Below are positions 1 through 61,923 of a DNA stretch of 64,000 bases, piece by piece. The stretch is from Haliotis rubra (Eukaryota): the NCBI RefSeq assembly GCF_003918875.1, contig NW_025766669.1, positions 1,674,001-1,738,000 of the forward strand. Reading direction: 5' to 3'. The translations under genes were made by a program, and so were the position numbers. Positions within the stretch are counted from its first letter, which is position 1. Each line of letters opens with the position of its first letter. The notes below the pieces were generated by a model. That model saw only the letters and a program-made list of their open reading frames with translations. It made no database searches and was not told the origin of the DNA.

Positions 1-732
1 GATGATTGCGCCCTGCATCCACTCGTTGAAGCGGGTGGTGCCCAACACATGACCCTCACCGGGGTCTGTGAGTGACATGTATGTCTGAGTGTGAGGACGG
101 AAGCCTGGAGAGCCAAGTGACCTGTGAGGCTTCAGGGTGACCTGTTTCCCTTTAGCCAGACAATGGTACGCCAACTGGAAGGCAAGGTACTCCACCGGGT
201 TGGGCTGACGACGTTCATCTCTCAACGCCTGAGCCAGCTTGCATGTTGTATTCATGAAGTCTTTCTCGAACTTGTTCTCGTCCCATGTCAGCTTGACCTT
301 GTTGACGTCATCGACGACGCTGAAGTTGATGTAGCCGGGTCCTTCAGTCGGGACTACGCCCACAAACAGCTCCCTCTCAGCCTCCCATTCTCGGACGATG
401 CCCAAACAGACGCGGCAGATTCGGAAGGTCGAGTCCAGAAGTTGCCTCACGGTGTTGTCCTTCAGGATCTTCTCGCCAATAGCCATGAAGGTTTCAGCCT
501 TAGAAGAGTCATCGGGAAAGATGAGTTGAAGCGTCTGTCCGAGTTGTTTGGTGACGGTCTCGTTGTCGGCAGCGGTGGTCATGGCCAGTTCTCGGTCAGA
601 CTGGAACTTCTGTGTCGTCCGGCACTCGAGTTTGATGTGGATGTTGTACAGGTTGAGCAGCATGTCGTGAAGGAGAGACAGCGATATCTGGCGTAGGGTT
701 CCCACACCAAGACACATGTTGGCTTCCTCACA
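1..732 (-). CDS. Gene A large exon (244 codons, open to window edge)
   Basis: Acceptor tttgtttccag then CEEANMCLGVGTLRQISLSLLHDMLL...WDENKFEKDF...EYLAFQLAY...WMQGAII with no stop. Missed by the ORF track because it lacks a stop inside the window. Confidence 0.9.
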
Positions 733-3314
733 CTGGAAACAAATACTCACATATCAAATACCGGAATCAATGACATTTGTTTAACAGAGATTTATATAAC
801 ATAACGGAAAACAAACAACACATGTACTTNNNNNNNNNNNNNNNNNNNNNNNNNNNNNNNNNNNNNNNNNNNNNNNNNNNNNNNNNNNNNNNNNNNNNNN
901 NNNNNNNNNNNNNNNNNNNNNNNNNNNNNNNNNNNNNNNNNNNNNNNNNNNNNNNNNNNNNNNNNNNNNNNNNNNNNNNNNNNNNNNNNNNNNNNNTTCA
1001 CTAGGTTTCACCTCCACACCTGCTATATAGACATTATTCGCGATTTGCGTGAAATTGCTGGAATATTCCTCCATATAGCTGGTATATTGCTGAGTGCGGT
1101 GTAAAACAACAAACAAATCGTGTTTCCATGTTTGTCTGCACGGTAACCGTGTGTTTAAACGACTCAGATTTACATTACTTCGGGATTTCCTCCCAAATTA
1201 AGCAGACACGCCTTGAAAAAAGTAGAACGCTATCCAAAACGGTGTTAAACCCAACTCACTCACTAACTAATGACGAGATGTACTCACCGGGATTGTTGAC
1301 TGTCCACGTGCATCATCGTTAACTTCAGCTGCAGGCAGGGGATTTTTCTCCATCAAATCAATTCGATCTGAAACCACAGACACGAAAATAAAATCGATTC
1401 AATTCATGCTACCAGAAAAAGTCACAAAACCGATATTTCCATGTTTCTTTCATATGTTGTGTTGTAAAATTAATGTTTAAATTTAAACTAATTTACCTCA
1501 ATATAATAAACAAATTTTTAATTTTGAAAGTGTTATTTTTGTTAGTCTCTCTCACAGTCCCTGAACCATATCATATTCCCTACTGCCCAGAGCTCCCTAC
1601 AATGCTAAAGCCCTAAATGAAGCAAGTCTAGATTTCCTCAAGTTCAGTTTCCCACCTGACTGGGGCTCCTTTAAAATCTAAACGGTTTATTTTATCAAAA
1701 CTATATACATTCAGAGACTAAGCGTTAGACTAGAGTTTTATTCGTTCTGACAGTATTTTAGCCATAAAGCGTCAAGATCAAATTTGCATATGAACACAAA
1801 TCAGTCATTAACACAAAGTCACACTCAAAAGCAAGATTTCGTGAACACAATCCAATATCACAATGCTATCTACAATTTATAATAATAGCCCTCATGTATA
1901 CTATTTACAATCCAGAACACGGGCCCAACGCCCAATTTTTAAAAAAGCAGGCAACTTGTAATGCACATAAAAGCATCTTTAAATCTATAGTTTACGATAC
2001 ATTTTTAGTTGCACATTTAAACTTTTGACCAGTCAGAAGGCCGCGCCTTTGGATATTCGGTTACGTAATACTCGGCGCTTGAAGGTCCGGCCTCGGTAAG
2101 TATGAGGAACCCGGATGTACAACCGGTAAAGTAGAGAGCGTTATATCGAGGGAATGACTTACCGGACACGGAGTTTCCGAAGTTGCTGTGTTGTCCATAT
2201 CCGTCATGCTGAAATAAACAATACAGGTGATTGTTGTGACAGGTGACATGCTTGTTGATGTTCAAGTATTTCCGGGATAGCACACACTCACTGCATGGCT
2301 TGTAAGGCGCATTGCGTGAGTAGATGTATGATGGGTTTGTTACGGAAGTTATACAGTGGCGTCGTACTTTTGTGAGTGTGTTTACGAGCAGAATTAGGAA
2401 AGGCATTACGTATTCACAGCCGTGGCGGTTTACATTTGTCGGAGGTACACAGTCACACTTCCATCTTTCGTGGAAGCCGCGATGGCTGAGTAGGTAAGAT
2501 GGCTGACTTTGTGTGCTGGCGAGTAGGTGCCTGATTCTAAATTAACATGGTGTGGGTTCGAAGCCCGAGGACTCAACTTAAAAAGTACTAGAATCTGTAC
2601 TTTACTGAGAACGTGTAATTACAAATATAATGTGTTACATTTGACCACTTTTTAAAAAACCCATTGTGTATTCAGAGAGAAGAAAAGGGTTGAAACTCGG
2701 ATATATTCATCCATCATTTCAAGGAAATATATCTTTCAGAAATCTGGCATGTTAGCAGAGCCCTCTGCCAAACCAATTCGTTTCTCGGGTGTTCAGTGCA
2801 CCAAGCGACACACAGCTTACACACACACTTTACAAACTCCCGGATCCCGCTCTGAATACGTGTTCACAGACAATAAATGTGGAAATATTTACCTGTATTC
2901 TCCTCATGTAGCATGCTAGAGCCGATCCCAGGAAGAGTATCCCCACACATGCAATGATTCCAATGATGAGGGCCGCTAGGGCCAGTCTCGTGTCTGGTCC
3001 ATTTGGATTGCTCTGTTAATAAGAAGGTTAACGCGTTGAGTGAACTTTCACTACAACAATGGTTGCATCAGACGTCCGTTTTGATTAGATGTACATCTTT
3101 GAACAGTTAACTTCTAGCGCCATCATCACAATCATCATCATCATCTTCAGGGGCGGTGGGGTAGCCTAGTGGTTAAAGCGTTCGCTCGTCACGCCAAAGA
3201 CCCGGGTTCGATTCCCCACATGGGTACAATGTGTGAAGCCCATTTCTGGTGTCCCCCGCTGTGATATTGCTGGAATATTGCTAAAAGCGGCTTAAAACTA
3301 AATCCACCCACTCA

Positions 3315-3350
<36 letters not shown>

Positions 3351-4276
3351 TATATCAGTTACTATACATGACAACGCTGAGCAATACGTTTCTTCTTCGC
3401 AGTCAAGTATTAACAATAATGTTCTTTCGAATACCAGTAAATATTGATGTTTCCATAAAGCGAAATTCGTTTCCGTTATATATAGTATATAGGTGTATAT
3501 AACCGAATAATTGCAGGGGTTGTAAATCTGACTTGTCAAAACTCAGATCAGGAGAAATCGTGATCCAGGATTTTCAAATTTTATCCGATTAAACACAACT
3601 ATTCATGTTTTGATAAAACAGAAATCATTTTCGTTATATCACACACACGTGTACTATGTAAAAGAACACAAACTTTATAATTATGTGTAAATCTGCCAAT
3701 GTTTAAGATAGATGAAATCGTTAACATTCACTGACACGTTGGTTGTACGAGTAGTTTCAATGCGCTCGTTAATCTGCACATATAATATGAACGTAGCATT
3801 CGCTGAGCTCTCAGTGTGGTTTGTTTGTTATATACACACTTCTCTGTAAATTTCTCTCAAATTTTAATTAATTTCCTTTTAAAATTGGGACGATAAAAAT
3901 CACCAGTAATGACTTCCCTACTTACACAATGCGACGGTTTATGAGCAGTTATTTGCGCTCTCGTCGGAGATTGAGTTTGTACAATGTAATGCACAACGAT
4001 TTGTCTAAACAGAGGCCACTGTGGAGTGTGCGCAATGACTCAGAACAAACGACAAAGAAATCGTTCATGAAAATACCACAAATGCATGGTAATTAATCAG
4101 AAATCCCATAATGACAAAATACAGTCCCCCAAATAAATTTGTTTTAAAAGTTTTATTTATCAGCTCAACGTGTTAATAAATATTGCGTAAATTCAACTGT
4201 GACAACTTACCTCGTTCTGGGCCGCGGACAAGCCAACGAGCAGTGTTAGAATCACACTGCCTAATAGTCTCCGCAT
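1..4276 (-). CDS. Gene A: uncharacterised type I membrane protein with predicted cytosolic MfnB/DUF556-like TIM barrel (multi-exon, 3' part outside window)
   Basis: Hand-built exons with GT-AG boundaries and consistent phases: 4276-4211 (MRRLLGSVILTLLVGLSAAQNE, signal peptide), 3012-2893 (SNPNGPDTRLALAALIIGIIACVGILFLGSALACYMRRIQ, TM helix), 2208-2163, 1367-1288, 732-1. The last exon is clearly paralogous to gene B (SPGFRPHTQTYMSLTDPGEGHVLGTTRFNEWMQGAII vs SPGFRPHTQTYMSFTDPGDGHVLGTTRCMNWMQGAVI). Confidence 0.85.
1542..1733 (+). mobile_element. Helentron/HINE-like ~190-bp repeat family (other copies 10872-11063 minus, 18700-19020 plus, 24425-24623 plus)
   Basis: Four similar copies. The subterminal inverted repeat AGTCCCTGAA / TTCAGGGACT is followed by a 3' hairpin GACTAAGCGTTAGTC. 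Confidence 0.65.
3149..3316 (+). mobile_element. tRNA-derived SINE family 1 (~165 bp, TCAC-repeat tail); >20 copies or fragments in window
   Basis: GGGGCGGTGGGGTAGCCTAGTGG (A box)..GGTTCGATTCCCC (B box)..GCTGGAATATTGCTAAAAGCGGCG. Copies include 6918-7075, 16225-16325, 16395-16573, 19592-19755, 27807-27972, 30065-30203, 30737-30902, 32033-32193, 33360-33765, 35340-35458, 57805-57968, 59210-59355 and 63438-63585. Confidence 0.93.
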
Positions 4277-12830: not shown

Positions 12831-12918
12831 ACTCTTAGTTTTAAACACTTTAGACAATATGTACATAACGTATAGGAGTGATGCTGTATTTTTCCTTCAT
12901 CCATCACTTACGTCAATA

Positions 12919-18042: not shown

Positions 18043-21000
18043 GTGTAGTGTAGATTGTAGCATTCATGGAAATTCTGTGATTCATGGAAGCATTGTGATT
18101 CCCCAGGAATATGTGTTACAACTAGACAGGCTTAGTTATACCGGGACGTTGTCAAAATGGGAAGACACCGCCTTACTGTAGGGATGATGTGTATTCAGAT
18201 GACCAGATATAGGCATGAGAATGCAGACGCAGAAGTAGTCATAGAAGTTGTCATAAATAGCCCCTTTTGTGGAACTGAGCCAGAGTGACTACACCATATT
18301 GTGACTCAAAATGAGAAGACCCTGTGAGAGGGGGGGTCAGATTGGTGCATATGAACTGTGTTAGTTTGAAATAAGCCAGTTGGGAGCTACCAATTAGTGT
18401 CAGGTGATAAACAAGTTAATCCTAGATCCACAATGAGACAATACTCTTGTTCCAGTATTTTTCTTAATTATATCCATACTAAGAATGTTTCAGATGAATG
18501 AAATTCATTTGAAATCGTTGACAAATATAACCAAATGCCAATATGATTGACCAAATGCCAAATGCCAATATGATTGACCAAATGCCAGTATGATTGACAC
18601 ATGTTTAATACCACAAACATTAGAATACTGCCGCCAAACGTCAATAGTTATGAAATACATCTATACAAACAAACTGAAACGTCACTGACACATATGTGAT
18701 AGTTTGTCTCACAGTCCCCGAACCACATTATTTCCCAGCTGTTCAGCCCTCTCTGTAAGTCCTAAATGAAGCAAGTCTAGATTTCCTCAGGTTCTGAATC
18801 TCTGGTCTCCCTTTGGCTCCTTTTCAATTTAAATGGGTTTGTTTGTTACAATCAAAATTATATATACTGGACAGGCTAAGTTATGGATATTGGTATTTTT
18901 ATGATTGATATTTTATCAGTGTGCCAATGAATAAATAGATCATTGTTCATAATTTCAAAATTTACATATATCCCTAACTATTTTTGTACAGTATATATTC
19001 AGAGACTAAGCGTTAGTCTACATATGTGACCGCATCTTTCAGTGTGAGTCTGAGTCACTGAGCCAGGCACCCATACTTCTCTCACCTCACAAAATTCACG
19101 GGGGCTTAATTTTCATGTGAATCGCTCTCAAGTGCATTGTTTTGTCATGCCATGTGTCATCTTCACGTGGGTGGTTACCAAGGAGACGAAGACCGTAGAC
19201 ATTTATCACTAAGATGAATTTCAACTCAGAAAGGGAGAACGTTTTTCATCTACATGATGTATGTTTTAACTAAACTAAGAAGTCCGATTCCGTGCATGGC
19301 CATCACTGTCATATTGTGAGAGAAGGAGCAGTTAACACAGACCCTCGTGTTTTCGCGATGAATGAAGATTTAAAAAATAATTGAGATGACCCCCGGCTTG
19401 AATGCTTCACAGCACAATAAATCACGAGGGACCGTGGGAGGTAACTCCGACCTATAAGCTCTCAGCATCACCATTAGGCCACCCACATTTGTAAACAAGC
19501 TACAATAAAAAATTAAATAAATACTCCTTCTGTTTGTTTCAGGCATGAAGGGACACACCAATGTAACATAATGTACCTGTGTGTTTGTATTGAGTGAGTG
19601 AGTATGGTTTTACGCCGTTTTTAGCAATATTCCAGCAAATTCTCTGCGGGAACACCAGAAGTGGACTTCACACATTGTACCCATGTGGGGAATCGAACCC
19701 GGGTCTTCAGCGTGACGAGCGAACACTTTAACCAGTAGGCTAGCCTACCGCCCCGTTTTAGGCATGTGACACACCAGTGTAAAGTAACCTAGCGTATACC
19801 AGTGTTTCTGTAAATCGTTGGGGTTATTAAACATTACTTCAAAATTAAGTAAAATTGAATTAATAATCTATTTTTGTAAATCCGTGTTAACATTGACACT
19901 AAATCTTGCTTGAGTTCACTGACATATCAGTAAGCTAGATTTTGCAATCAGCTTGGGTAACCTAACTTAGAGGGTTGAGTGATAAGTTCTTAGCGTCACA
20001 TAGTGGGAACACCGTAACATTGAAATATATGTGTTGTCAAACTTCTAAGGTTAGCAACACCGGAACTGATCCAAAGAACCCACTATATGGTGAAGCGACC
20101 GTCGAAAGCGTCAAAGCGCTAGTTCTGTTTGTATCTCCTCTGTCAGAGCACATTTCATTTATGCAGATACTTTGGTAATGACGGAAATATCAGCTAGCTG
20201 GTTCCAAAGATTATCGTCTCTGACACAGAAAACACCAGGCACAACATGCCTTGTGATAAACTAGCGCTGTTTGAAACTGGTCAAGAAAGGTTCTTGCAAT
20301 GACTTGTGACTATGGTTGAAATCCGGATTCGACATTTCTAGTCTCGAGTCCAAACAACCATTAAGATAGAGGAAACGTTTGACATCCCCATGACCACATA
20401 TATCTGACACGTTAAAATATGGTACTTGTTGGTCCCTGCCTGGCGCTCGGCATTAATGGGTACAACAAGGACTGGTCGGCTCGGAGTCAGTATAATGTGT
20501 CTGAGTGGGGTATTCATGCTTCACTGCGGCATGGTATCTCAGTGGGCTAGCACTGTAACAGCTTAAGTCTGGGCTAGTACAAGCAGCCGCACATACACAT
20601 ACATACGCATGCACGTCGTCATATGAGCGAAATATTCTCAAGCACGACGTAAAACCCAATTTCACCTCACCTCCCCGTACGTTTCACTATCCGAACGTTT
20701 TTGATGAAAAACGGAAGTGTTCGGATTGACGAGGCCTGACTGTATATATAGTGGGTTGCACCTGATGTCAGACAATATAAGTAAGTACAATGTGCCTCTT
20801 GTTAGCGGATATTTCTTTCATAATATCAAAATCATGGGTCGTTAGTCTATTGGTGTTAGTCGATTGGGGCCCGTTAGAAACGTAAGGTAATTCAGATATA
20901 TGTGTTTGTTATGTATTATTGTATATGTAAATAATCTTTATCTTTTCTAGGCACATTCTATCAGGGTGCCGTACTCAGCAATAGTCAAACTATGGCGACG

Positions 21001-21354
21001 GTCTGTAAATAATCGAATCTGGACCTAATAATCCAGTGATCAACAGCATGCGCATCAATCTGCGCAATTGGGACACAATGGCATTTGGCAACCAAGTCAG
21101 CTAACCTGGCCAACCGATCACGTTAGTGGCTTCTCACAACAAACATGGGTTGCTGAGGACCAAATCTAACCCGGATCTTCACAGGTCAGGGTGCATGTTT
21201 ATAATTTATTGCCAGAGGACCGTTCATATTTAATGGCTTTGGTGGGTGGAGTGTTGATGATGATTCGTAGGGAGAAGCTTGTACAATGTGGATGACCCCC
21301 ACACCTTATATGTATGTACAGAGTAAAAGAACATATGTTAAATATTTTATGTAC

Positions 21355-22758: not shown

Positions 22759-24796
22759 GGTGTACAGTCTCTACGCTGATATGCCATGCTTGTATAGTGA
22801 GTGAGTTAAGTTTTACGCCGCACTCAGCAATATTCTGGTTTGGACAGGATGTTTTTATTACTTAAGATTATTTGAAGATAAAAGTGAAATAGTATTTATA
22901 AAATTCAGTATAAACAAAGTATGTAACTGGAGAACAGGATGTTTTATAACAGTTATTTTTTCATGACTTTTTTCCTGTGACCAAGATATATGCAGCTACC
23001 TGTATGCCAAGAACGAGGTGAAAGGAGAAAATGATGATGTTTAAGTGACTTTCTAATAAGTGTTATCTGTGCACTGACAAACGTGATGTAAAATAATATG
23101 GTGCTTGGTCTCATATGTTTGATAGGTACATGTATATAAATTATTGTTTTTGATAATATTCTCAAGTAAATGTGATCTGGCAAATATATGTTGATGTGCA
23201 TATATGTTGATGCAATATGTCTTAATTTGAAAATCATAATTCATTACATGAACTGATAAAACTATAGTTAATACCTAATGTTGTCTTTTTTATCTGGGCA
23301 CATACCATTATCATCAAGGGTACAGCTTAATGAAGCCTTATGCAACCAACCATAAAATGTGTTGTTTTAGGCGGTCTGTCTTTTGGGAGGTCTGTCTTAT
23401 GGAAAGATACCATCTACACAATTGGAATACGATGACACGTGTCAACCAGTGCCCCAATTACATCACGACATGACTGCTTAAAGGGGGAGGAAGTCCCGAA
23501 GCGATGTCAGTCATATATAGAAGTTTACCACTTAGTTGAAACCCACGAGCACGGGAATGGTACTGACAAACCAAGAAACATAGTCGGTACTACAGGGATT
23601 CGAACCCAGAATGAATCAGAGTGTTTTGCTTGTCCAGGGGACATAATTGTGGCGCCTTGGGCGAATGAGCAATACACGTACATTTCTATTTCAAGGCTGG
23701 ACAGTCCCTTTACAGGAGGCTGCGTCAGGGGAAGCCAAATGAACTTTGACCCCAAATCAAAATTAAGGATTGAACGTCGAAGATTGCCCTGAACAATAGG
23801 GCGGGTCTCTGTCACCACACTCAGCTGGCATGACTTGGTGTATATAAATGAATATCCAACTTACGTAATGAAGTAAGAGGCATTAAGTAAAAAAATTCAA
23901 AATTGTCCGTCAGTATCTCATGCGACCCAGATATGCCCGGGAACAGACCACCAGGCTGGAAATTTGTCTTGTTGATAAAACAGGCTTCAACTCACTTTGC
24001 AACTTAAATGCAATTATTTTTTTGTATCAAAATTATATATTCAGAGACTCAGGTTCACAGACTAGGTTGACACAATCATGTCATCGCATCCCAGATGCGT
24101 AGAGTAATGCTTATACTGTTGATCATCGGATTGTAAGGTCCAGACACGATTATTTACAGACCGCCGACATATAGCTGGAATATTGTTGAGTGCGGCGTTA
24201 AACAACAAACAATATATAATTTATATTCATAAAACGTGAACTCCATAAGAAAAGCAGTTTCAGTTATCGGCCCAAATAAATTCCATTGGACGTAATATGC
24301 CAAATAAAGGGGAAATTCATATGTATGGATCACTGAACATCAATGAAGGCACCATGGCCATAATCTTTAAATATCTTACTGCTGTCGTAATTAACTCTAT
24401 GGTATAGCATGGGGGGAGGGTTTTTAGTCTGTCTCACAGTCCCTGAACCACATTATTTTCCCTAATGCTTAGTCCTCCCTGCAGTGCTAAAGCCCTAAAT
24501 GAAGCAAGTCTAGATTTCCTCAGGTTCAGAATCTCCTAACTCACTTGGGCTCCTCTTCAGTTTAAATAGGTTTATTTGTTACTATCAAAATTATATATAT
24601 TCAGGGACTAAGCGTTAGTCTAGGGAGGTGTGTGTGTGCTGAAACGGGGCCATGTGTTCACAGAGAGGAAATGTTTCGTCTCTCTGCGATTTACACAACT
24701 GTTTTAGTAATCCTGCTTAAATTCATAGAATAATATGCAAGACAACACTGAGACCTGGCGAGGGGAAATAAGCTTAATTGCACTTCTTATAAATTA

Positions 24797-27451: not shown

Positions 27452-28918
27452 AATTCCTACACTCAATACCCACTTTGTATCCTTAACAGGCATATTATCA
27501 CGGTAGACAAACATAACAAAAATACCTTTCTAATAAGAGTTGTAGAGTTGGGGACACAGTATACCAGGTATATCGTGGCTTGTCAGCTTAATGTGGGGAA
27601 AAAAGTAGTCTTGATGCTTTACTTACCGATATGTCAGTGAAGTCATTCAAGACTTAGTGTCAATGTTAACACGGATTAAAAAAAATTAGATTATGAATTT
27701 AATTTGGCTTAATTTTTAAAGTAATGTTTAATAACCCCAAACATTTACAGATACACTGGTATAAGTAAGGTTACTTTACACCGGTGTGTCAATGCATGCC
27801 TAAAACGGGGCGGTGGAGTAGCCTAGTGGTTCAAGTGTTGGCTCGTCACGCCGAAGACCCGGGTTCGATTCCCCACATAGGTACAATGTGTGAAGCCCAT
27901 TTCTGGTGTCCCCCGCCGTGAAATTGCTCGATTATTACTAAAAGCGGCGTAAAACTAAACTCACTCACTCACACAAAGCCTTTTACCACATTGTAAGAGA
28001 ATTCGTACCCATTTGTTATAAAAGGATTTAAAAATATATTGTAAGGGATCTGGAATAATGGAAATAATATAATTTTACTTTTACAAAGTCCAAATGGTCA
28101 TCAGAGGTGTGCTACACCGCCGCCAGCGCGGATAATGTTAACATTATTTTAAGCATTCCGTCTTCCGGGTTAAGCCAATGCGTAGAAGAAAATGTTCAAA
28201 CATAATCAGGTTAACACGACCTAACACGTGACTGTCTCGAGTCGGCTTTCAGCAAGGTGAAGGTCATCGTTAAGCGCAATGTCAAGGCAGGCTTTCCGTT
28301 GGTATTCACGTTGGCGAAACCGGACCAAGACCAATCTGGTATAGCACATTCGCTTTAAACGGATGTCTGGGGGTGGGGTGGGTTTTTTTCACAACAACAG
28401 GATTGCACCATACATCACGTTGATAAATAAACTGTCTATGTCCGGACCGTGTTCTCGGGAAAATGAATGCCTCAGCCAATCGGATCAGTTTAACCACAGC
28501 AGGTTGATCAATGTAGATCTACAAACCGCAAGTGCACGTGTTTCAATAAAAGAAAAAAACGAGAAAGAAGTCCCAGCATCAATACGGTAGAAATCCGTCG
28601 TCCTATCGGACAAGGGAAGTTTCGAAACAACCAGACTGGGGATTTGGAAGACAAATGAGTTGATTTTGATCTGTTTCCGAGGACACAATGTAGCATTAAA
28701 TGCAGACACATGAACACTAAAGAACTCGCTACCAGGGACTCATGAACCAGGCTCCGCTGCATGGTATGTATGGCTGACTGGTTTGTTTGATTTGATAGTT
28801 TTGTTTGATATATATCGCCATTGTTGACTTGAGAGATATTTTGTAATTTTGCTAACTTTGAAGTGGAGGTTGTTTTTGACCATCATTTTGAAACATATCA
28901 TTATTCATAAGTATAATT

Positions 28919-29084
28919 GGGGCGGTGGGGTAGCCTAGTGGTTAAAGCGTTGGCTCGTCACGCCGAAGGCCCGGGTTCGAATCCCCACATGGGCACAATG
29001 TGTGAAGCCCATTTCTGGTGTCCCCCGCCGTGATATTGCTGGAATATTGCTAAAAACGGCGTAAAGCCATACTCACTCACTCAC
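28919..29084 (+). mobile_element. SINE family 1, full length with 14-bp TSD
   Basis: TSD TCATAAGTATAATT at 28905-28918 and 29085-29098. Confidence 0.95.
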
Positions 29085-31866
29085 TCATAAGTATAATTAG
29101 TTTGGTGGTTTTGTTGTTGTTTGCATTGTATGTTGTTTTACGCCGCACTCAGAAATATTCCAGCTATACGGCCGCGGTCTGTAAATGATCGAGTCTTTAC
29201 CAGACAATCCAGTGATCAACAGCATGAGCATCTATCTGTTTAATTAGTAGTAGTACAATCATCGTTGTCATCATCATCGTCGTATTTTGTTTATCTATTT
29301 TTATTGCTACGATCCGGTGTTTAAGTAAATAGTTGTCATGAGGATCGAGTGTTAAGTGTTACAACCTTTTCAGCTATGGACACTATCATAGAACTGACAC
29401 ACCTAACAATTTAAAACATCCAGTGACGTCATAAACGTTTTGGTTATTATGGTATGATAACTCCGTGTTGCTGGGCCCAGTCCAGCTATGCCTAATTATA
29501 GAACGATCTCCGTTGTCTGTGAAGTAGTCCAGCTATGCCTAATTATAGAACGATCTCCGTTGTCTGTGAAGTTAGTTTTCACAGAGCTATTGTCTAAATG
29601 TGACTCAAACGCTATTACTGTGATTGACAAATCCACAGGTACTCAACTGGAGTCTCAATATTGTAAGTGTCCATTTTTCTCTTCATGTTTGATAAACAAT
29701 AACTTTCTCTTATCAGTATGACAGTATGTGGAAAACAACACGATAAGGGTCCGTTCATAATTTATGGCTAGGAGCGGTGAAGTTGATGGTGAAGATGGGG
29801 TGGTTTGGGTGGGTGGGTGGTGTGTTCAACCATTTTGTACATTGATTTTGTGATATTGTACTTACTTTGTACTTCAAATTGGTGTGTGTGTGTGTGGTGT
29901 GTGTGTTCATTCACATTGTACATGCTACTCCAAAAAATCAGTCTTCATTAAAAAATCATACATTTTAGCATTGCATCAAGGGAAATGAATGTGGTTCAGG
30001 GACTGTGGGACTGTGGCACAGCCCATGCATCAGATGGAATTGAGCAGTGACTGAGTTAGTGGGGTTTAGTTTTACGCCGCTTTTAGCAATATTACAGCAA
30101 TATCACGGCTGGGAACACCAGAAATGGGCTTCATACATTGTACCTATGTGGGGAATCGGACCCGTTTCTTTGGCGTGACGAGCGAGCGCTTTAACAACTA
30201 GGCGACATTATAATTTCACAAGAGATTGCAGTGAGTTGTGTAAGGCAATCACTGTGCTCTTGACCAAAAACTTCTTACCACCCGCCAAACCACCATAATT
30301 GACTCTTTTGTTCATCATTAAATATCATTTTTGTAATCATTTGTTATTACACAGAGTATATTTGTTAATTACATTAAGAGCCATTGATATAAACATACAT
30401 TTCACTGTGTTTGTTTAATTTTGACTGTGTGTGGTTTCATTTTGGACTTATTTTCTAAAAACTCCCTCTATATCAACATTTTTCACCGGTCCCGAGCGAT
30501 ATCGGTTTAGAGGGAGTCCACTGTACATATTGTGTTCTAGGAAATCTGACCCTCAGGCGCAACTTTTCCTACGATTCTAATGCATCAATGCATTACACGC
30601 ACACGTATATTATTCATGAAACTGATGAATTTGAAGAAGTCCTTTCGATTGCATAGATAGATATTGGGTGCCTACATGCACCACATATATACGCTATACT
30701 TTTCGATGTGTTATATGATAGGTATTTACACGAGCGAGTGAGTGAGTGAGTATAGTTTTACGCCACTTTTATCAATATTCCTGCAATATCACGGCGAGGG
30801 ACACCAAAAATTGGTTTCACACATTGTACCCTTGTGGGGAATCGAACCCGGGTCTTTGGCGTGATGAGCGAACGCTTTAACCACTAGGCTACCCCACTGC
30901 CCATTATTTACACGACTTAACTTGAGACATGTTTTTTTATATAGATACATTTTGTGAGATGATCCAGTATGATTAGTAGTTACAGAATGTATTATGTGCC
31001 CATCATATGATGGCTCTCTGAAACCATATGCAACTGAAACCATTGAGAACTTTCCCTCCCACAAGAGTCTAATTTGATTGGTCGGGTATTTTTAGCGCCG
31101 CGTCATTAAATGGAGCCGTTACATTGTTATGTATTACAACAGGATGGAGACGCAATAATCGCGACTGATTGTTTTAACAACCCGGGTTGTTTTCATGGAA
31201 ATGTGTCTTGAAACGTTCCTAGCCGGTTCTAAATTATGCCAATCACTGGACATAAAATGCATGAAATTATCATGGTATACTATGAATTTGTCTAACGGAA
31301 ATGTCAAATGTTAAGTGTCCAGATTCCCTCAGATCACGATATCTAAATGTTATCCCTCTGTGGAGCAGATAACCCAAGAAGCCTGTGATGTGCTGTGTAA
31401 GCCTGCGAAGTTGGTTATCACAGAATTCAGGGGCAGATCCAGCTTTTGGAAAAGGGGCGCGGGTTGGCAGGTCGGTCGGGGGTGTTGCACAGGTTATTAA
31501 CACCCGCTTTCACGACAGTTCCCATTGTTTTTTAANNNNNNNNNNNNNNNNNNNNNNNNNNNNNNNNNNNNNNNNNNNNNNNNNNNNNNNNNNNNNNNNN
31601 NNNNNNNNNNNNNNNNNNNNNNNNNNNNNNNNNNNNNNNNNNNNNNNNNNNNNNNNNNNNNNNNNNNNNNNNNNNNNNNNNNNNNNNNNNNNNNNNNNNN
31701 NNNNNNNNNNNNNNNNNNNNNNNNNNNNNNNNNNNNNNNAATGTTTAAATCTGCCTCGCACGACATAGTTTCAATGTCAAATCGACACTTAGATTACTGG
31801 AGTCATATCATTAAGTCCTCATTTTCTTTTCACGTTAATTCAAAAAGTAATTTCTTATTATTACAG

Positions 31867-34800
31867 GTTGACAGCATGGCCTGGATGTACACGAGTTGGT
31901 TTGCACTGATCGGAGCCTGTCTATCAACAGTTGGGCTAGTCGGATTGGGAGCGATGTTAGCGCTATGGACCTGCTCTCATATCACGCAGGTAGGTCAGTT
32001 TTATAGGCAACAGTGAGCAGGTGGGGCTACAGTGAGCGAGTGAGTATGGTTTTGCGCCGCTTTTAGCAATATTCCAGCAATATTACGGCGGGCGACACCA
32101 GAAATGGGCTTCACACGTTGTACCCGTATGGGGAATCGAACCGTGTCTTCAGCTTGACGAGCGAACACTTTCACGACTAGGCTACCCAACCGCCTCTGTT
32201 GGGCAGCAGTCCTCGATGGTGGGGTTCAGTGGGATGGTATCTGGTAGAGAGTTACATATTTTATCCAACATAACTGAGAGAGTAAATGTTGCTTTAAGCC
32301 GCACCAGCAATGTTGCAGGTTTTCGCGGTATCACCATAATTATTATTTGTTATTTGTCTTTGATAAATTTGAAAAAAAGAAAAACATTTAATTTTTTTAG
32401 AAATACAAAAAAACCCATCTTAATGAAGTCTGCAAGTAAATCACAGGCGCATCAGACATTCAGTCAAACAAGCGGTTGATTATTTTTCTAAAACAATTTA
32501 CGCTCAATTTCTTCACACACATTAGATATGAATAAAGAAGAATTTCAATATTGCTGTTTCAGAGGTTATCAATGCGATCTACTTGGAGCAAGCTGTATAC
32601 CAGTAAGTCTTAATGGGAAAACTCCAGTGTTATCAGTGTCACAGCTCCCGCAGGCCTGTTAAGTGATAGGCGATAAGTCGGTCTTAGGGTTAACATAGCT
32701 TTGGGTAACCGAACCTCAGCAACAGGTGCTAGTCGTGGTGTCCTAAAGCACAAAGTCATAATGAAATATATTTCATATGACGTTTGTCTACTTTTTATCA
32801 TTTAATCCTTTTTTTAATTTGTGATACGCGTTCATAATAGCAACAGTTAACAATTTTAAGAAATGTATATAACATTATCAGCTTTTGATAAGGATATATT
32901 ATTTTAATTGTCCGGTTTAGGGCTGAACGAGGTCGATTGTTCGGATGTGTTGTCATACCAATAGTATATGATATTGTAGCGGAACTGAATCATGTTTCCT
33001 TTTAATTCAACAAATACGAAATCATATTCAAGTTTATCTACCGCGGGTAAAATATTCTCAAAGTGATGTGTATGTACTTTTCTGTTCACAGAGCATAGGC
33101 GAACTGTAATTTACGTTTCTCGACTACGGTGCCAGGTCTCTGACGTAAATGTTCTGTGTTGTAGGCAGGTCAGACCTCGGACAGTCCGGCCCAACCTCGG
33201 TCACCAAAGAAGACATCTGCCGTGTGGACGTGGACGTGGACGTGGACGTGGACGTGGACGTGGACGACAATGGCTTGATCACGGAAGAACTGGTACAAAA
33301 CATTTCACATTGCTAAAATCTTCATGATTCAAGTGCATCTTTTATAATAAATATTGGGACGTGAGTGAGTATGGTTTTACGCCGCTTTTCCAGCAATATC
33401 ACGCGCGGTTGACACCAGAAATGGGCTTGGGACGTGGGTTAGACTAGTGGTTAAAGGCCTCCGCCAGTCAAGCCTAAGGTTTGGGTTCGCTTCCCCGCAT
33501 TGGTACATTGTGTGAGTGAGTGAGTTGGGTTTTGCGCCGCTTTTAGCAATATTCCAGTAATATCACGGCGGGGGACACCTGAAATGGGTGTCACATATTG
33601 TACCCATGTGGGGAACCCGGGGCCTTCGGCGTGACGAGCGAACGCTTTAATCACTAGGTTATCCCGCCGCCCTGTACAATGTGTGAAGCCTTGGCTGTTT
33701 GTGTCCCCCGCTGTGACATTGCTGGAATATTGATGAAAGCGGCGTAAACGCATATTCATTCACCGCTGTAGTGGCTACAGATGGTTTTGCAACTGATGAA
33801 CGGTATATCAGAGAGTATACACGATACTCCACCCTCTCAGCATTAGCAAAGGTAGTTTTCACACATTTTGCCAGCCACATCTGAATTGCGTTATATTTCT
33901 ACGAATCACTGGGGCTGTTCCAAGCGCTAAAATGAAGTGAGTGAGGGGGTGAATGGTTATGGTTTACGCAGCTTTAAGCAATCCTTCAGCAAAACTACTA
34001 CAGGACCATTCCGAAGAATATGTCAGCTACCTGTTCGAGTCTAACACTTCAAATTCTGAGATTGTAGTCATGTTCTGTTTTGAACATTCTGAATTGATGA
34101 TGTCTTTAAAATCCATGCATGTTCCATATACAGTGTCCTGCGACCGTGACAGCTGGTGTTGGCACCCTCCGACAGGTGGCAGTCTCTAGTCTCCACGACC
34201 TACTCCTCGGCCTTGCCACGCTCCGACCCCCGGGGAAAGAAAGGGAGAATTCAACGCCACCCTCATCTACTCCCATCGAGGACACGGACAGGGATGTCGG
34301 TCCCCACACCCAGGAAAATGTATCGATGCCACGCCCGAACACAGAGAGGCGTATGTCACTCCTCAACAGACACCTACCGGTTTGTGAGACGCTGGACGGA
34401 GAATACGTACCACTCTCAGACATACCAACCTACATGGTAACTAGTACTGAAACGATGAGCAATCCTGTTGCACCTATGATGTCGGCAGATGTTGCGAAAC
34501 CTGCACTCTCTGCAGCGTTGTCTCCTCCTTCACGCATGGACAATCACTCCGCCCACGTCAACACGACCACATCTGCAGACACGGACGCCTTCAGGGCATA
34601 CGTGAATCGTCAGGTCGAGGCCATCTTCCCCAAGGACAGCATGCGGCGCGAGACCTTCTTATCCATCGTTGAGGAGATCCTGTTCGCCTCCACTGCCCAG
34701 CTCGTAACAGACGCCGTCTTCAGGGCGTTCAGGGTCACCCTGGGAGTAATGCGTCATTGGGAACTCGAGCATGCACTTGTGGGTGCCTTTCCAAGAGAGG

Positions 34801-36974
34801 CTCAAGGCGAGATCACATACCAGGTTAGAAAATCGTATTATGACATACACAAATCCCACAGGAGTGTAAAGAACCGGAATTCGCTATGTTTGCGTTCCAA
34901 AATCGTATGATAATTGGTTCGAATCCCGGTTAAAACTGATAATGTCTATGGGATCGTTAGCTTGTGACCGTGGGTTTCACTAAAGAGCTAAGCGTCTAGT
35001 CTTAGAACTGCGTCACTAAGCATCAAGGGGCGGTGGGGTAGCCCAGTGGTTAAAGCGTTCGCTTGTCACACTGAAGGCCCGTGTTCTATTCCCTACAAGG
35101 GTACTCTGTGTGAAGCCTATTTCTGGTGTCCCCCGCCGTGATATTGCTGGAATATTGCTGAAAACGGCGTAAAAACCAACTCACTCACTCACTAAGCATC
35201 AAAGCGCTAAAAGTGTAAGACTTGCATCACTGCGCTGCTCCATCAACACCCATACTAGTATACGACAATAAAGGTTATACCTTACCTAAATCGGATCAAA
35301 TTTTTGAGGAGGAAATCAGAAACTGGTATTTATCTTCATGTTACGCCGCCTTTAGCAATATTCCAGCAAGATCATGAGGAAGAACACCAGAAGTGGGGAT
35401 TTGAACCCGGATTTACGGTGTGACGAACGAACACTTCAACTACGAGGCTACCACACCGTCCTATATCTGTGTTTTAAACATCATATCTATTGCTGACTTT
35501 GGTCCATTTTCAGGTCCAGTTTGTCTTGAATACCGTCACTTTCACATGGGACAAACACAAGTATGGGTCAGATTTGATACAGACGATGTCACAGATAGCC
35601 CACCATCTCCGGGAACAGGAACGGCAACCGACGTGCTCAGAATACCTGGCCTACCAGCTGGCATACTACAAGCTGTCCAAGGGACATCGTTTGGACTTGT
35701 CCGCGCACATGCCTATAGGATCCCCCGGATTCCGCCCACACACGCAAACATACATGTCCTTCACAGATCCAGGCGATGGACACGTGTTGGGTACAACTCG
35801 TTGTATGAACTGGATGCAGGGCGCGGTCATCAACGTGGATACCCAGAGTCACCAGCCAGAGGAACACCCTGCTGATAAACGACCATCTTTGTTAGATCTG
35901 TCCAAGGTGCGCCTCCACACAGGATCAGCAGCGCCAACCTCCACATCTGTGGGAACAGCGGTTCTCTCTGAATATGGTGGATTTGATGAACAGTTTGGGG
36001 AGATAGTTTATGTGGTATCCTCTGAAGCCACAGCGGCCTTCCATCGGGGAGCTGCCGAGTACAAGGTGACCATGGACGGACTCAGTACAAGCCAGGTTGT
36101 GAGGTACATGAGAGCTCTAACTTCTAACGTCAGCCGTGAACGCTTCAGTCAGCTTCTTTCCGCTGCGTGGACTCTCAACCAGATCGTTTTTGACGACTAT
36201 GAGCGAGAAAAACCAATGCATCTTGTCAGCAACAGCGATATAGCAATGAGAATTCTTGAGATAACCTCAATGGGTGGTTTCGATGCTGTGTGCCTCACGG
36301 GAGGAAGTGGTGACAGTATTTCAAAGGACATGTTGGGATTTGAAGAAGCTCTTGTCTTCAATCACCGGGCTCACATGCTCGGTCTGGTCACACACGTATC
36401 TGGTATCAAGTTCGACAAAATCAGACAGGCTGTGTTTGCCGGAGTAGACATTATCGGCATAGCGGGAGGAACAGCGTTGAGGTTCATGGACAGTGAGAGC
36501 GGCATTCTCGGACCTCACATGGAGGACGTCCAGAGGATCCTGCAGAGCAGAGACGACGCTGCCAAGTCTGTCCGCGGAAGAGGCGCGCACCTCCTGGTCA
36601 GACTGGACACCATGCTCTTCGAGGGAACCATTAGCCAACAACAGAACATTCTCAGAGAACAGTTATTAAAAGCTCTAAAGTCGAAGCGCAAAGCCGAAAT
36701 AGAAAACCTACTTAATGAACTCCATGTCGTCTGCTGTGAAGCTACTACTTCCCGCCACGTTGTGGAGGGTACTGCAGGTCGTCTGTGCCGCGCTACGGCG
36801 CCATTGCTGCAACAATGCGCAGACAGTGCAACCGAGTGGCGGATGTTCATTGCCCGTCTCAGGCTGCTTCTACATGCAAAAGACAATCTTTATTTAGTAG
36901 AGGAATACGAGAGCGAGCCGTGGCTGACTTATCGACGGAAATACACTGACCAGCTTAAAGCAATGGTACTGTAG
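31867..36974 (+). CDS. Gene B: uncharacterised single-pass membrane protein with predicted cytosolic MfnB/DUF556-like TIM barrel, paralogue of gene A
   Basis: Exons 31867-31989 (VDSMAWMYTSWFALIGACLSTVGLVGLGAMLALWTCSHITQ, TM), 32563-32602, 33165-33292, 34134-34823, 35514-36974 (TAG). All are GT-AG and in frame, and phases 0/1/0 match gene A. About 813 aa. The start is uncertain: ATG 31876, an ATG|GT at 28761-28765, or an exon in the N-gap. Confidence 0.87.
34134..34823 (+). CDS. Gene B exon (230 codons) with S/T/P-rich insertion
   Basis: Part of ORF 34119-34910 between the acceptor catatacag and the donor CAG|GTTAG. GVGTLRQ and IFP..S...ETF blocks match gene A. Confidence 0.88.
35027..35188 (+). 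mobile_element. SINE family 1, full length with 14-bp TSD, in gene B intron
   Basis: TSD TCACTAAGCATCAA at 35013-35026 and 35189-35202. Confidence 0.95.
35514..36974 (+). CDS. Gene B terminal exon (486 aa) carrying the TIM-barrel-like domain
   Basis: Long ORF 35490-36974 with acceptor ccattttcag. Contains GAAEYKVTMDG, GGFDAVCL, AHMLGLVT and AGVDIIGIAGG beta/alpha motifs. Confidence 0.92.
   Translation, partial: VQFVLNTVTFTWDKHKYGSDLIQTMSQIAHHLREQERQPTCSEYLAYQLAYYKLSKGHRLDLSAHMPIGSPGFRPHTQTYMSFTDPGDGHVLGTTRCMNWMQGAVINVDTQSHQPEEHPADKRPSLLDLSKVRLHTGSAAPTSTSVGTAVLSEYGGFDEQFGEIVYVVSSEATAAFHRGAAEYKVTMDGLSTSQVVRYMRALTSNVSRERFSQLLSAAWTLNQIVFDDYEREKPMHLVSNSDIAMRILEITSMGGFDAVCLTGGSGDSISKDMLGFEEALVFNHRAHMLGLVTHVSGIKFDKIRQAVFAGVDIIGIAGGTALRFMDSESGILGPHMEDVQRILQSRDDAAKSVRGRGAHLLVRLDTMLFEGTISQQQNILREQLLKALKSKRKAEIENLLNELHVVCCEATTSRHVVEGTAGRLCRATAPLLQQCADSATEWRMFIARLRLLLHAKDNLYLVEEYESEPWLTYRRKYTDQLKAMVL

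Positions 36975-40355: not shown

Positions 40356-61923
<21,568 letters not shown>

What the first reader, a model, noticed from the sequence alone, without database searches (positions are those of the whole stretch)
35730..36520. An animal membrane protein carrying what looks like an MfnB (methanofuran-pathway, DUF556) aldolase TIM barrel
Seen: the terminal exon of gene B encodes, in order, TYMSFTDPGD / GAVINVD / TSVGTAVL / SSEATAAFHRGAAEYKVTMDGLSTSQVVRYMRALTSNV / LLSAAW / SMGGFDAVCLT / LGFEEALVFNHRAHMLGLVTHVSGIKFDKIRQAVFAGVDIIGIAGG. Knowledge: 4-HFC-P synthase MfnB (MJ1099; Pfam 4HFCP_synth/DUF556) is a prokaryotic (beta/alpha)8 class I aldolase that builds a furan from two glyceraldehyde-3-phosphates using Lys27 and Lys85. 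As I recall it, its motif order is LLVSP.D.EE / GADIIDVK / VSATVGD / AA..GADYIKVGLYG....A..LM / VVAAGY / AGCDVAMLDT / ..EF...AH..GL..ALAGS.....I......G.DIVGVRG. Inference: all eight strands are collinear and the beta4 Lys (codon 36063-36065) is retained. The beta2 Lys and beta6 Asp appear substituted in this paralogue. I know of no described animal enzyme of this type. It may be a horizontally acquired or patchily retained triose-phosphate/carbonyl-condensing enzyme or metabolite sensor. The alignment is by eye and from memory only.
Basis: partly seen in the sequence, partly recalled or inferred. Interest (0 to 1): 0.92.

Follow-up and report, generated by a model that had tools for sequence, protein, structure and literature searches.

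The report
Degenerate MfnB-like barrel in abalone membrane protein
The last exon of this abalone gene does encode a TIM barrel distantly related to the archaeal furan-making enzyme MfnB, but it belongs to an unnamed family (molluscs, fungi, algae, amoebae, bacteria) and this copy has lost about half the family's active-site residues, so it is probably a non-catalytic, membrane-tethered paralogue.

Summary

Homology is also visible in sequence. A 97-sequence barrel profile hits MJ1099 at E 1.5e-6. A ~400-aa bacterial bridging subfamily matches the family (hhalign E 7e-87) and also PF04476 above threshold.

The protein is not a canonical MfnB. The family is 650-800 aa with extra helical domains and has no Pfam model. 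It keeps the Lys85 and Asp151 equivalents but has His-x-Glu-His where MfnB has Asp25-x-Lys27.

The window gene (gene B, a Haliotis species) keeps only 9 of 18 signature residues. Lys85-equivalent K184 is kept. The beta2 His/Glu/His, Arg, two other Lys, the beta6 Asp and a Tyr are lost. It arose by duplication of neighbouring canonical gene A and is still under purifying selection (omega 0.28 against 0.04).

Best reading: a membrane-anchored pseudoenzyme paralogue of a new, probably sugar-phosphate-acting, MfnB-related family.

The parts
31876..31989 (+). Gene B exon 1: start codon and a single N-terminal transmembrane helix (about 24 hydrophobic residues after an 8-residue tail)
   Evidence: tblastn of orthologues P0071 and P0316. 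Translation and the CAG|GTAGGT donor were read.
32563..32604 (+). Gene B exon 2 (small; coordinates approximate), a basic juxtamembrane linker
   Evidence: Local alignment of the H. asinina exon peptide to the window, flanked by a tttcag acceptor and a GTAAGT donor.
33165..33292 (+). Gene B exon 3 (approximate), an acidic linker with a (Val-Asp)n coding microsatellite
   Evidence: tblastn of P0071; splice sites read.
34133..34823 (+). Gene B exon 4: first part of the family's N-terminal helical domain, plus a lineage-specific low-complexity insert
   Evidence: tblastn of P0001 and P0071; acceptor ATACAG| and donor CAG|GTTAGA; frame checked.
35514..36974 (+). Gene B terminal exon (486 codons plus TAG): end of the N-domain, the barrel and the C-terminal helical domain
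35745..36566 (+). (beta/alpha)8 barrel, residues 78-351 of the exon, MfnB-like
35832..35840 (+). Degenerate beta2 motif Asn-Val-Asp, where the family has His-Val-Glu-His-Leu-Glu-Arg (the Glu and second His are deleted, Arg is changed to Thr)
36063..36065 (+). Lys184 codon on beta4, equivalent to MfnB Lys85; retained
   Evidence: Lys in 154 of 155 family barrels. HMM alignments to MJ1099 pair it with chain residue 92, which is Lys85.
36285..36299 (+). beta6 Ala-Val-Cys-Leu-Thr, where the family has Lys-Val-Thr-Trp-Asp. Both the family-specific Lys and the Asp151 equivalent are lost.
36567..36971 (+). C-terminal all-helical domain (residues 352-486), conserved across the family
   Evidence: AF2 helices H353-485 at pLDDT 86-98; family alignment A1.
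1..4276 (-). Gene A: the canonical paralogue (98% identical to H. asinina P0001, 755 aa; signal peptide, TM helix and an intact 18-residue signature). It runs off the left edge of the window.
   Evidence: tblastn; signature and hydrophobicity; omega 0.037.

Best explanation
Gene B (exons 31876-36974, +) of this Haliotis genome encodes a protein of about 810 residues. It has one N-terminal transmembrane helix and a large domain that is probably cytosolic. That domain consists of an N-terminal helical domain, a (beta/alpha)8 barrel and a C-terminal helical domain.

Shown: the barrel is a distant homologue of the archaeal 4-HFC-P synthase MfnB (MJ1099, PF04476/UPF0264). It belongs to a separate, unnamed family of about 650 aa with some 400 cluster representatives. 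Members occur in molluscs, fungi, Tetraselmis, Amoebozoa, a diplonemid, Myxococcota, Actinomycetota, Acidobacteriota and Chlamydiota. The family keeps MfnB's Lys85 and Asp151 equivalents. It has His-x-Glu-His on beta2 where MfnB has Asp25-x-Lys27, and an extra invariant Lys on beta6.

Also shown: gene B arose by duplication of neighbouring gene A within the abalone lineage and evolved fast on its stem. It lost 9 of 18 family-invariant pocket residues while keeping the fold, the beta1 TDPGxGH loop and Lys184. It remains under purifying selection.

Inferred: gene B no longer catalyses the family reaction. It acts as a membrane-tethered pseudoenzyme, either a ligand-binding or scaffolding/regulatory partner, plausibly of the similarly membrane-anchored gene A product.

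Inferred for the canonical family: an enzyme acting on a sugar phosphate, most likely a pentose 5-phosphate. It would use either a Lys (beta4/beta6) covalent mechanism or a His/Glu/His/Asp metal site.

For: Sequence homology: barrel profile A2 hits 4rc1_A at E 1.5e-6. Bridging subfamily A3 hits 4rc1_A at 3e-8, and 15 of its 19 members pass PF04476. A2 against A3 by hhalign gives probability 100 and E 7e-87 over 299 columns.

Degeneration: 64 of 202 near-invariant columns are changed in gene B. The key-residue string is QTDHN--TKATSHSDIA against the consensus QTDHHEHRKKDSYSDGG, and H. asinina shows the same pattern. About 58 of 62 mollusc and fungal proteins keep all 18 residues. H. rufescens gene B shares the beta2 deletion and the losses of the Arg and of two Lys. 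pLDDT falls below 50 exactly in the beta2, beta6 and beta8 loops.

Selection: omega is 0.278 (CI 0.21-0.37) for gene B and 0.037 (0.007-0.077) for gene A, at similar dS.

Origin: the gene B clade is sister to gene A (support 99/95), with a stem of 0.79 against 0.12.

Substrate theme: a zinc-type alcohol dehydrogenase is a neighbour in 8 loci from 6 genera and 3 phyla, and G6PD is a neighbour in myxobacteria. Fusion partners include LOG/SLOG with ribose-5-phosphate isomerase A, PNP_UDP with a cytidylyltransferase-like domain, a phosphonate-binding domain, and an ADH. A nucleoside hydrolase and HAD phosphatases are also neighbours.

Expression: the Biomphalaria family member LOC106051655 (P0051) was detected by mass spectrometry in haemocytes, at 4.05 against 28.4 normalised counts on parasite encapsulation (PMC6281880).
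Against: No biochemical data exist for any family member, so 'invariant' means 'catalytic' only by inference. Gene B keeps Lys184, the whole beta1 loop, the beta7 Ser/Gly and the beta8 Asp, so an altered activity is possible. I had no model coordinates and no MfnB sequence id. The beta2 register (His~Asp25, Glu~Lys27) and the pocket location of individual residues therefore rest on strand periodicity, not on a superposition. Membrane topology is inferred from the positive-inside rule alone. Transcription of gene B was not checked; its gene models come from NCBI annotation of two other Haliotis species. The pentose-phosphate idea rests on gene fusions and on neighbourhoods that are only partly conserved.
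Confidence: 0.6

Rival explanations
1. Gene B is still an enzyme with a changed reaction (neofunctionalisation). It would use the retained beta4 Lys184 and the beta1 TDPGxGH loop, for example as a simpler Schiff-base or carbonyl-binding catalyst.
For: Lys184, the beta1 loop, the beta7 Ser/Gly and the beta8 Asp are retained. Purifying selection acts on the barrel itself, with omega 0.27. The long stem branch would fit adaptive change as well as relaxation.
Against: The three Haliotis gene B orthologues differ among themselves at former pocket positions: His245, Asp402, Tyr437, Gly457 and Gly461 are kept in H. rufescens but lost in the window species and H. asinina. That looks like progressive decay, not a new fixed site. 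The pocket loops are shortened and poorly predicted. Omega is about 7 times that of gene A.
Confidence: 0.2
2. Gene B is a decaying pseudogene or annotation artefact with no function.
For: It has lost half of the signature residues and evolves fast (85% identity against 98% for gene A between the same two species).
Against: The ORF is intact over 5 exons with conserved splice sites in three Haliotis species. Omega is 0.278 with an upper 95% bound of 0.37. Exon identity is about 87%, against 70-78% in introns and flanks.
Confidence: 0.07
3. The likeness to MfnB is only the generic TIM-barrel fold (analogy), and the family is unrelated to PF04476.
Against: A direct profile hit to MJ1099 at E 1.5e-6 aligns the two conserved catalytic positions. 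A bridging subfamily passes Pfam's own PF04476 cut-off and aligns to the family at E 7e-87. JGI names those proteins UPF0264. MfnB stands about 3 Z units above all other folds.
Confidence: 0.03

Closest known systems
MfnB / 4-HFC-P synthase (MJ1099; Pfam PF04476 4HFCP_synth, UPF0264; PDB 4RC1, 4U9P)
   Same: It is the best structural match for both gene B and the canonical paralogue. Homology is detectable at profile level. The Lys85 (beta4) and Asp151 (beta6) equivalents are conserved in the family, along with Gly-rich beta7/beta8 loops. Gene B keeps the Lys85 equivalent.
   Different: MfnB is a single-domain protein of about 235 aa, whereas this family has 650-800 aa with N- and C-terminal helical domains and, in some gastropods, a TM anchor. 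Lys27, which forms the Schiff base (PMC6604932), and Asp25 are replaced by His-x-Glu-His. There is an extra invariant Lys on beta6. No family member reaches the PF04476 threshold. The hosts are eukaryotes and non-methanogenic bacteria with no methanofuran pathway (the last point is from general knowledge). Gene B additionally lacks the Asp151 equivalent.
Bacterial ~400-450-aa 'UPF0264 family' proteins (alignment A3, e.g. P0254)
   Same: The whole barrel aligns with the same motifs: TDPGxGH, HHE..R, (V/C)K on beta4, (D/E)(K/R)VT.D on beta6, YISGG and GVDGVGIG. They also carry His-x-Glu on beta2.
   Different: They are shorter, lack most of the N-terminal domain and part of the C-terminal domain, and have Arg in place of the beta6 Lys. 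15 of 19 pass PF04476. Their function is unknown too.
Class I (Schiff-base) aldolases such as DERA, and the two-lysine PLP synthase Pdx1/PdxS
   Different: No sequence relationship was shown here. The analogy is untested, and gene B has only one of the lysines.
Ribulose-phosphate-binding barrels with metal sites (e.g. ribulose-5-phosphate 3-epimerase)
   Same: From my own knowledge, the epimerase has a His-x-Asp on beta2 and an Asp in a 'DGG' motif on beta6 as metal ligands. This resembles the family's His-x-Glu on beta2 and W-D-G on beta6. 3-hexulose-6-phosphate synthase and OMP decarboxylase barrels appear among the Atlas and VIA matches.
   Different: This is a resemblance recalled from memory and was not tested. 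MfnB scores higher. No metal-binding evidence exists.
Pseudoenzymes (catalytically dead paralogues kept by selection)
   Same: Gene B fits the operational definition: it is homologous to a conserved putative enzyme family, has lost invariant pocket residues, and is under purifying selection across species. Independent parallel cases exist in Lottia (P0055) and Littorina (P0317).
   Different: The parent family's activity is itself unknown, so 'dead' cannot be verified.

Membership tests
MfnB / PF04476 (4HFCP_synth, UPF0264) | (beta/alpha)8 barrel whose closest solved structure is MJ1099 | tested here: met
MfnB / PF04476 (4HFCP_synth, UPF0264) | Sequence match to the Pfam model above the gathering score | tested here: not met
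   No match among 54 family members, including the window exon, even at E up to 10. Only the bacterial bridging subfamily passes: 15 of 19, best 30.7 bits against a cut-off of 22.4.
MfnB / PF04476 (4HFCP_synth, UPF0264) | Asp25-x-Lys27 on beta2 (Lys27 forms the Schiff base; PMC6604932) | tested here: not met
   The family's beta2 is G-A-I-V-H-V-E-H-L-E-R, with no Lys in the segment in 155 barrels. Gene B has G-A-V-I-N-V-D-T. The exact register against MfnB was not obtained.
MfnB / PF04476 (4HFCP_synth, UPF0264) | Lys85 on beta4 | tested here: met
   HMM alignments pair the family's (E/D)-C-K with MJ1099 Y-I-K at chain residue 92, which is Lys85. It is Lys in 154 of 155 barrels, and gene B has Lys184.
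MfnB / PF04476 (4HFCP_synth, UPF0264) | Asp151 on beta6 | tested here: not met
   The family's W-D-G aligns to MJ1099 L-D-T at chain residue 158, which is Asp151, and is Asp in 152 of 155 barrels. Gene B has Thr262 there. The feature is therefore met by the family but not by this protein.
MfnB / PF04476 (4HFCP_synth, UPF0264) | Single-domain protein of about 235 aa in a methanofuran (mfn) pathway context | tested here: not met
   Family proteins are 650-800 aa with extra domains. Bacterial neighbours are ADH, G6PD, peroxidase and similar genes, not mfn genes.
MfnB / PF04476 (4HFCP_synth, UPF0264) | Converts two glyceraldehyde-3-phosphate molecules to 4-HFC-P | not testable with these tools
   This needs an enzyme assay.
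Unnamed ~650-aa 'TDPGxGH / HxEH / K / K..D' family (alignments A1, A2, A4) | Full-length sequence homology (N-domain, barrel and C-domain) | tested here: met
   E 3.5e-143 to 1e-79 against mollusc and fungal members, with 98-100% coverage of the query (the terminal exon, residues 43-486); 407 cluster representatives.
Unnamed ~650-aa 'TDPGxGH / HxEH / K / K..D' family (alignments A1, A2, A4) | 18-residue invariant signature QTDHHEHRKKKDSYSDGG | tested here: not met
   Gene B keeps 9 of the 18. Neighbouring gene A's orthologue keeps all 18.
Pseudoenzyme | Loss of conserved pocket residues while coding sequence stays under purifying selection in several species | tested here: met
   Searches show the losses, which are shared by three Haliotis species. 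One search gives omega 0.278 with CI 0.21-0.37.
Pseudoenzyme | Demonstrated lack of catalytic activity | not testable with these tools
   This needs biochemistry on gene A and gene B products.

The most novel reading that the evidence does not exclude
The canonical family (gene A here, and its relatives of about 650 aa in molluscs, fungi, algae, Amoebozoa and bacteria) is an undescribed enzyme. It would convert a pentose 5-phosphate, released from nucleotides by LOG/nucleosidase-type partners, into a small heterocyclic or carbonyl product by MfnB-like multi-step chemistry, using a relocated catalytic Lys or a metal. In gastropods it has become a membrane-tethered, immune-responsive module, and enzyme/pseudoenzyme pairs such as gene A and gene B evolved repeatedly.
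Probability: 0.25. Interest if true: 0.8.

Novelty: new variant of a known kind. Interest (0 to 1): 0.6.

Why it matters
MfnB-type barrels have so far been treated as prokaryotic enzymes of methanofuran biosynthesis. This analysis shows a large, highly conserved sister family without any Pfam or NCBIfam model. It is present in animals (all major mollusc classes sampled), fungi, green algae, Amoebozoa and several bacterial phyla, and its active-site layout is different but equally invariant.

Its fusion partners (LOG/SLOG, ribose-5-phosphate isomerase, nucleoside phosphorylase) and neighbours (zinc-type ADH, G6PD, haem peroxidase) point to unexplored sugar-phosphate or nucleotide-derived chemistry. 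One snail member rises about 7-fold in haemocytes of a schistosome-resistant strain during encapsulation (PMC6281880).

The window also offers a natural experiment: a canonical copy and a degenerate copy about 28 kb apart (head to head), both membrane-anchored. Similar degenerate copies arose independently in limpets and periwinkles. That pairing makes the family's function and the role of the pseudoenzyme directly testable.

Tried and rejected
1. Single-sequence Pfam, NCBIfam and PDB searches of the exon found nothing. The full-length 54-sequence profile against PDB and Pfam also found nothing relevant. Only a broader, barrel-only profile reached MJ1099.

2. I could not obtain a residue-level alignment of beta1 and beta2 to MfnB. 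HMMER aligns only beta3-beta4 and beta6-beta8. Model coordinates are not exposed. The best 150 hits of the representative search were all family members.

3. Literature hits for 'DUF556' were false prefix matches to DUF5565 and DUF5568. I found no paper on an animal MfnB-like protein.

4. An amidohydrolase-like reading (3mtw, E 0.08-0.98) was considered for the beta6 Lys as a possible carboxylated lysine. I set it aside because amidohydrolases are absent from the top structural matches.

5. DRE-TIM metallolyases (pyruvate carboxylase CT domain, HOA aldolase) appear as second-tier Foldseek hits, but with rmsd 18-25 Å and low TM.

6. ORF-based neighbourhood clustering in high-GC bacteria produced many overlapping spurious ORF clusters. 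I used only neighbours confirmed by Pfam.

7. A single origin of all degenerate gastropod paralogues was tested and rejected (AU p 5e-6). The group was named after seeing a first tree.
Full report
OBSERVATION. The ORF 35490-36974 (+) is real. Codon 36063-36065 is Lys184.

GENE MODEL AND ORGANISM. tblastn with relatives shows two paralogues in the window. Gene A lies on the minus strand (4276 down to 1, running off the window). It is 98% identical to P0001 (755 aa; signal peptide plus TM helix). Gene B lies on the plus strand. The H. asinina protein P0071 (797 aa) and the H. rufescens protein P0316 (809 aa) are gene B orthologues, 85% and 73% identical. They define five exons: 31876-31989 (Met plus one TM helix), about 32563-32604, about 33165-33292, 34133-34823 and 35514-36974. 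The H. asinina locus is syntenic, with MCM5 downstream and gene A nearby. The window therefore comes from a Haliotis species. Basic residues follow the TM helix, so the large domain is probably cytosolic; this is inference.

SEQUENCE HOMOLOGY. Direct searches fail. Pfam, NCBIfam and PDB give nothing with the exon or with a full-length 54-sequence profile. A barrel-only profile of 97 diverse members (A2) hits MJ1099 at E 1.5e-6 in the 177,635-sequence PDB set.

That alignment pairs the family's '...G-x-A-E-C-K...' with MJ1099 'G-A-D-Y-I-K'. This is chain residue 92, which is Lys85 after allowing for the 7-residue tag. It also pairs 'F-D-K-V-T-W-D-G' with 'C-D-V-A-M-L-D-T', which is chain residue 158, or Asp151.

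The same profile retrieves bacterial proteins of about 400-450 aa at E about 1e-86. JGI names them 'UPF0264 family', and some carry precomputed PF04476. In an alignment of 19 of them (A3), 15 pass PF04476's gathering score, and the profile hits MJ1099 at 3e-8. hhalign of A2 against A3 gives probability 100% and E 7e-87 over 299 columns. Homology with the MfnB superfamily is therefore established by fold, by a direct profile hit and by transitive links.

WHAT THE FAMILY IS. The family has 407 representative clusters at E<=1e-3 among 1.84 billion representatives. Named members come from:
- Polyplacophora, Bivalvia and Gastropoda;
- chytrid, mucoromycote and basidiomycete fungi;
- Tetraselmis;
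- Mastigella, Cavostelium and Pelomyxa;
- the diplonemid Rhynchopus;
- Myxococcota, Actinomycetota, Acidobacteriota, Parachlamydiaceae and Desulfobacter.

All are annotated as uncharacterised or are mis-named. Across 155 complete barrels a set of positions is almost invariant: Q-T...T-D-P-G-x-G-H (beta1 and its loop), H-V-E-H-L-E-R (beta2), a Lys after beta3, E-C-K (beta4), F-D-K-V-T-W-D-G...P-S (beta6), T-Y-x-S-A-G (beta7) and G-V-D-G-I-G-I-G (beta8). In 58 of 62 mollusc and fungal proteins the 18-residue signature is letter-perfect.

Compared with MfnB, PMC6604932 reports two Lys and two Asp as essential and Lys27 as the Schiff-base residue. The family keeps the Lys85 and Asp151 equivalents. 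It has no Lys anywhere in the beta2 segment. It has an extra invariant Lys four residues before the beta6 Asp, which places it on the same face of the strand; this is inference from the DSSP strand limits.

GENE B IS DEGENERATE. Of the 202 columns that are at least 90% conserved in the other 53 sequences, gene B differs in 64. The differences are concentrated in the beta2, beta3, beta6, beta7 and beta8 strands and loops. At the key positions it reads QTDHN--TKATSHSDIA against the consensus QTDHHEHRKKDSYSDGG. In detail:
- the beta2 His is changed to Asn;
- the Glu and second His are deleted;
- Arg is changed to Thr;
- the post-beta3 Lys is changed to Glu;
- the beta6 Lys is changed to Ala;
- the Asp151 equivalent is changed to Thr;
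- the beta7 Tyr is changed to His;
- two beta8 Gly residues are changed.

Lys184, the beta1 loop, the beta7 Ser/Gly and the beta8 Asp survive. The three model segments with pLDDT below 50 are exactly the beta2, beta6 and beta8 loops. H. asinina gene B has the same pattern. H. rufescens gene B shares the beta2 deletion and the losses of Arg and of two Lys, but still has the first His, the beta6 Asp, the Tyr and the Gly residues. The site has therefore eroded stepwise.

SELECTION AND ORIGIN. These are NG86 estimates between the window species and H. asinina. Gene B gives omega 0.278 over 706 codons (bootstrap 95% CI 0.21-0.37; dS about 0.27-0.31). Gene A gives omega 0.037 over 244 codons (CI 0.007-0.077; dS 0.24). 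By region of gene B, omega is 0.15 for the N-part, 0.27 for the barrel and 0.32 for the C-domain. The intron between the last two exons is about 71% identical, against 87% for the exon. Gene B is thus constrained, though about 7 times less than gene A.

In ML trees the molluscs are monophyletic (100) and sister to fungi (SH-aLRT 88). Tetraselmis, Parachlamydiaceae/Acidobacteria, Myxococcota and Actinomycetota branch outside them. Within a TM-anchored gastropod subclade (98/95), the three Haliotis gene B sequences are sister to gene A (99/95), on a stem of 0.79 against 0.12 substitutions per site. Other degenerate copies exist: Lottia P0055 has even lost the beta4 Lys, and Littorina P0317 is also degenerate. 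These do not group with gene B (AU p 5e-6), so degenerate paralogues arose at least three times.

FUNCTIONAL CONTEXT OF THE CANONICAL FAMILY. In 23 bacterial loci, the neighbour that recurs across phyla is a zinc-type/MDR alcohol dehydrogenase. It occurs in 8 loci: Actinomyces, Microbacterium, Streptomyces, Dermatophilaceae, Acidobacteria and Parachlamydiaceae. Myxobacterial loci add glucose-6-phosphate dehydrogenase and an animal-type haem peroxidase. Kineosporia adds a multicopper oxidase. A nucleoside hydrolase and NagD-type HAD phosphatases also occur.

The fusion partners found are:
- a phosphonate/phosphite-binding domain (three clusters);
- LOG/SLOG, with or without ribose-5-phosphate isomerase A and an endo/exonuclease-phosphatase domain (Amoebozoa, Desulfobacter);
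- a cytidylyltransferase-like domain plus a PNP_UDP nucleoside phosphorylase;
- a zinc-type ADH (Glycomyces);
- DHDPS.

Together with the Gly-rich beta7/beta8 loops, this points to a phosphorylated sugar as substrate. A pentose 5-phosphate generated from nucleotides is the most economical guess; this is inference.

The Biomphalaria glabrata member LOC106051655 (P0051) was detected in haemocyte proteomes. It rose from 4.05 to 28.4 normalised spectral counts when haemocytes of the resistant BS-90 strain encapsulated Schistosoma sporocysts (PMC6281880, Table 3).

MECHANISM. For the canonical family I see two possibilities.
(a) Covalent Lys catalysis, as in MfnB and DERA, with the nucleophile relocated to beta4 or beta6.
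(b) A His/Glu/His/Asp metal site, reminiscent of ribulose-phosphate epimerase. This comparison comes from my own memory and was not tested.

For gene B either mechanism is crippled, because it lacks both the beta2 triad and the beta6 Lys/Asp. I therefore read gene B as a membrane-anchored pseudoenzyme that is retained for binding, scaffolding or regulation, possibly of gene A's product. Gene A's product is also membrane-anchored, and the two genes lie head to head about 28 kb apart. The steps that are shown are the fold, the homology, the residue losses, the selection and the duplication history. The steps that are inferred are loss of activity, topology, the partner and the substrate class.

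COMPARISON AND NOVELTY. The closest known family is MfnB (PF04476), but four of its defining features are not met by this protein: the Pfam threshold, Asp25/Lys27, Asp151 and the single-domain architecture. I found no paper describing an animal or fungal relative. I class it as a new variant of a known kind: a distinct, unnamed family within the MfnB-like barrels. The window copy is a degenerate member.

LIMITS. I had no coordinates for a residue-level superposition, so the beta2 register is not fixed. Gene B has no transcript evidence. There is no biochemistry for any member. Absence from other animal phyla was not tested exhaustively, because the searches list only top hits. The HGT-versus-retention question therefore stays open.

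Noticed in passing
window 1-4276 (-): Canonical paralogue (gene A), 98% identical to H. asinina P0001. It has a signal peptide, a short ectodomain, a TM helix and the full 18-residue signature. It is cut by the window edge, and an N run (830-996) lies in one of its introns. Omega is 0.037.
   Followed up: partly
window 33200-33260 (+), gene B exon 3: A coding (Val-Asp)n microsatellite. The window species has about seven VD units, where H. asinina has 'VDVD' and H. rufescens 'VDVDD'. This is a length-polymorphic acidic linker between the TM helix and the domain.
   Followed up: no
window 34230-34560 (+), gene B exon 4: A Ser/Thr/Pro-rich low-complexity insert of about 110 residues that is absent from gene A and other family members. 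It is present in the H. asinina orthologue.
   Followed up: no
window e.g. 3180-3297, 27818-27969, 28949-29081, 30741-30873, 35057-35189, 62792-62922: A dispersed repeat of about 130-160 bp (SINE-like) with at least 12 copies in the window. It is also present in the H. asinina locus at 80-92% identity. One copy sits in the last intron of gene B.
   Followed up: no
window 12918-13136, 20968-21187, 24049-24203, 29135-29238, 58115-58309: A second dispersed repeat family of about 170-220 bp, shared with the H. asinina locus at up to 95% identity.
   Followed up: no
window 41457-43603: A long tandem array: many offset blastn matches with a period of roughly 150-180 bp. It coincides with extreme strand asymmetry (GC skew -0.47, AT skew +0.38 in 42001-44000).
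   Followed up: no
window ~40600-48200 (-): MCM5 lies downstream of gene B on the opposite strand, as in H. asinina, where the called gene in L024 carries MCM_N, MCM_OB, MCM, MCM_lid and MCM5_C.
   Followed up: partly
P0055 (Lottia gigantea), P0317 (Littorina saxatilis): Independent TM-anchored degenerate paralogues. P0055 has lost the Arg, two Lys (including the Lys85 equivalent) and the Tyr. P0317 has Glu changed to Gln and all three Lys replaced. They do not form a clade with Haliotis gene B (AU p 5e-6).
   Followed up: partly
P0129/P0313 (Mastigella), P0152/P0315 (Cavostelium), P0168 (Pelomyxa), P0170 (Rhynchopus), P0149 (Desulfobacter): Giant fusion proteins (1000-2100 aa) join the family barrel to LOG/SLOG, ribose-5-phosphate isomerase A and endo/exonuclease-phosphatase domains. 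P0134 (5969 aa, NCBI, unnamed) also contains the barrel.
   Followed up: partly
L001, L005, L007 and other myxobacterial loci: The family gene is flanked by glucose-6-phosphate dehydrogenase and an animal-type haem peroxidase in Archangium, Hyalangium and Pyxidicoccus.
   Followed up: partly
database names: Misleading automatic names are attached to family members: 'Acyl-CoA dehydrogenase' (AFDB A0A428YW30), 'pnrc100 replication protein h-like' (Plakobranchus P0035) and 'zinc-binding dehydrogenase' (Glycomyces P0241, a true ADH fusion).
   Followed up: no
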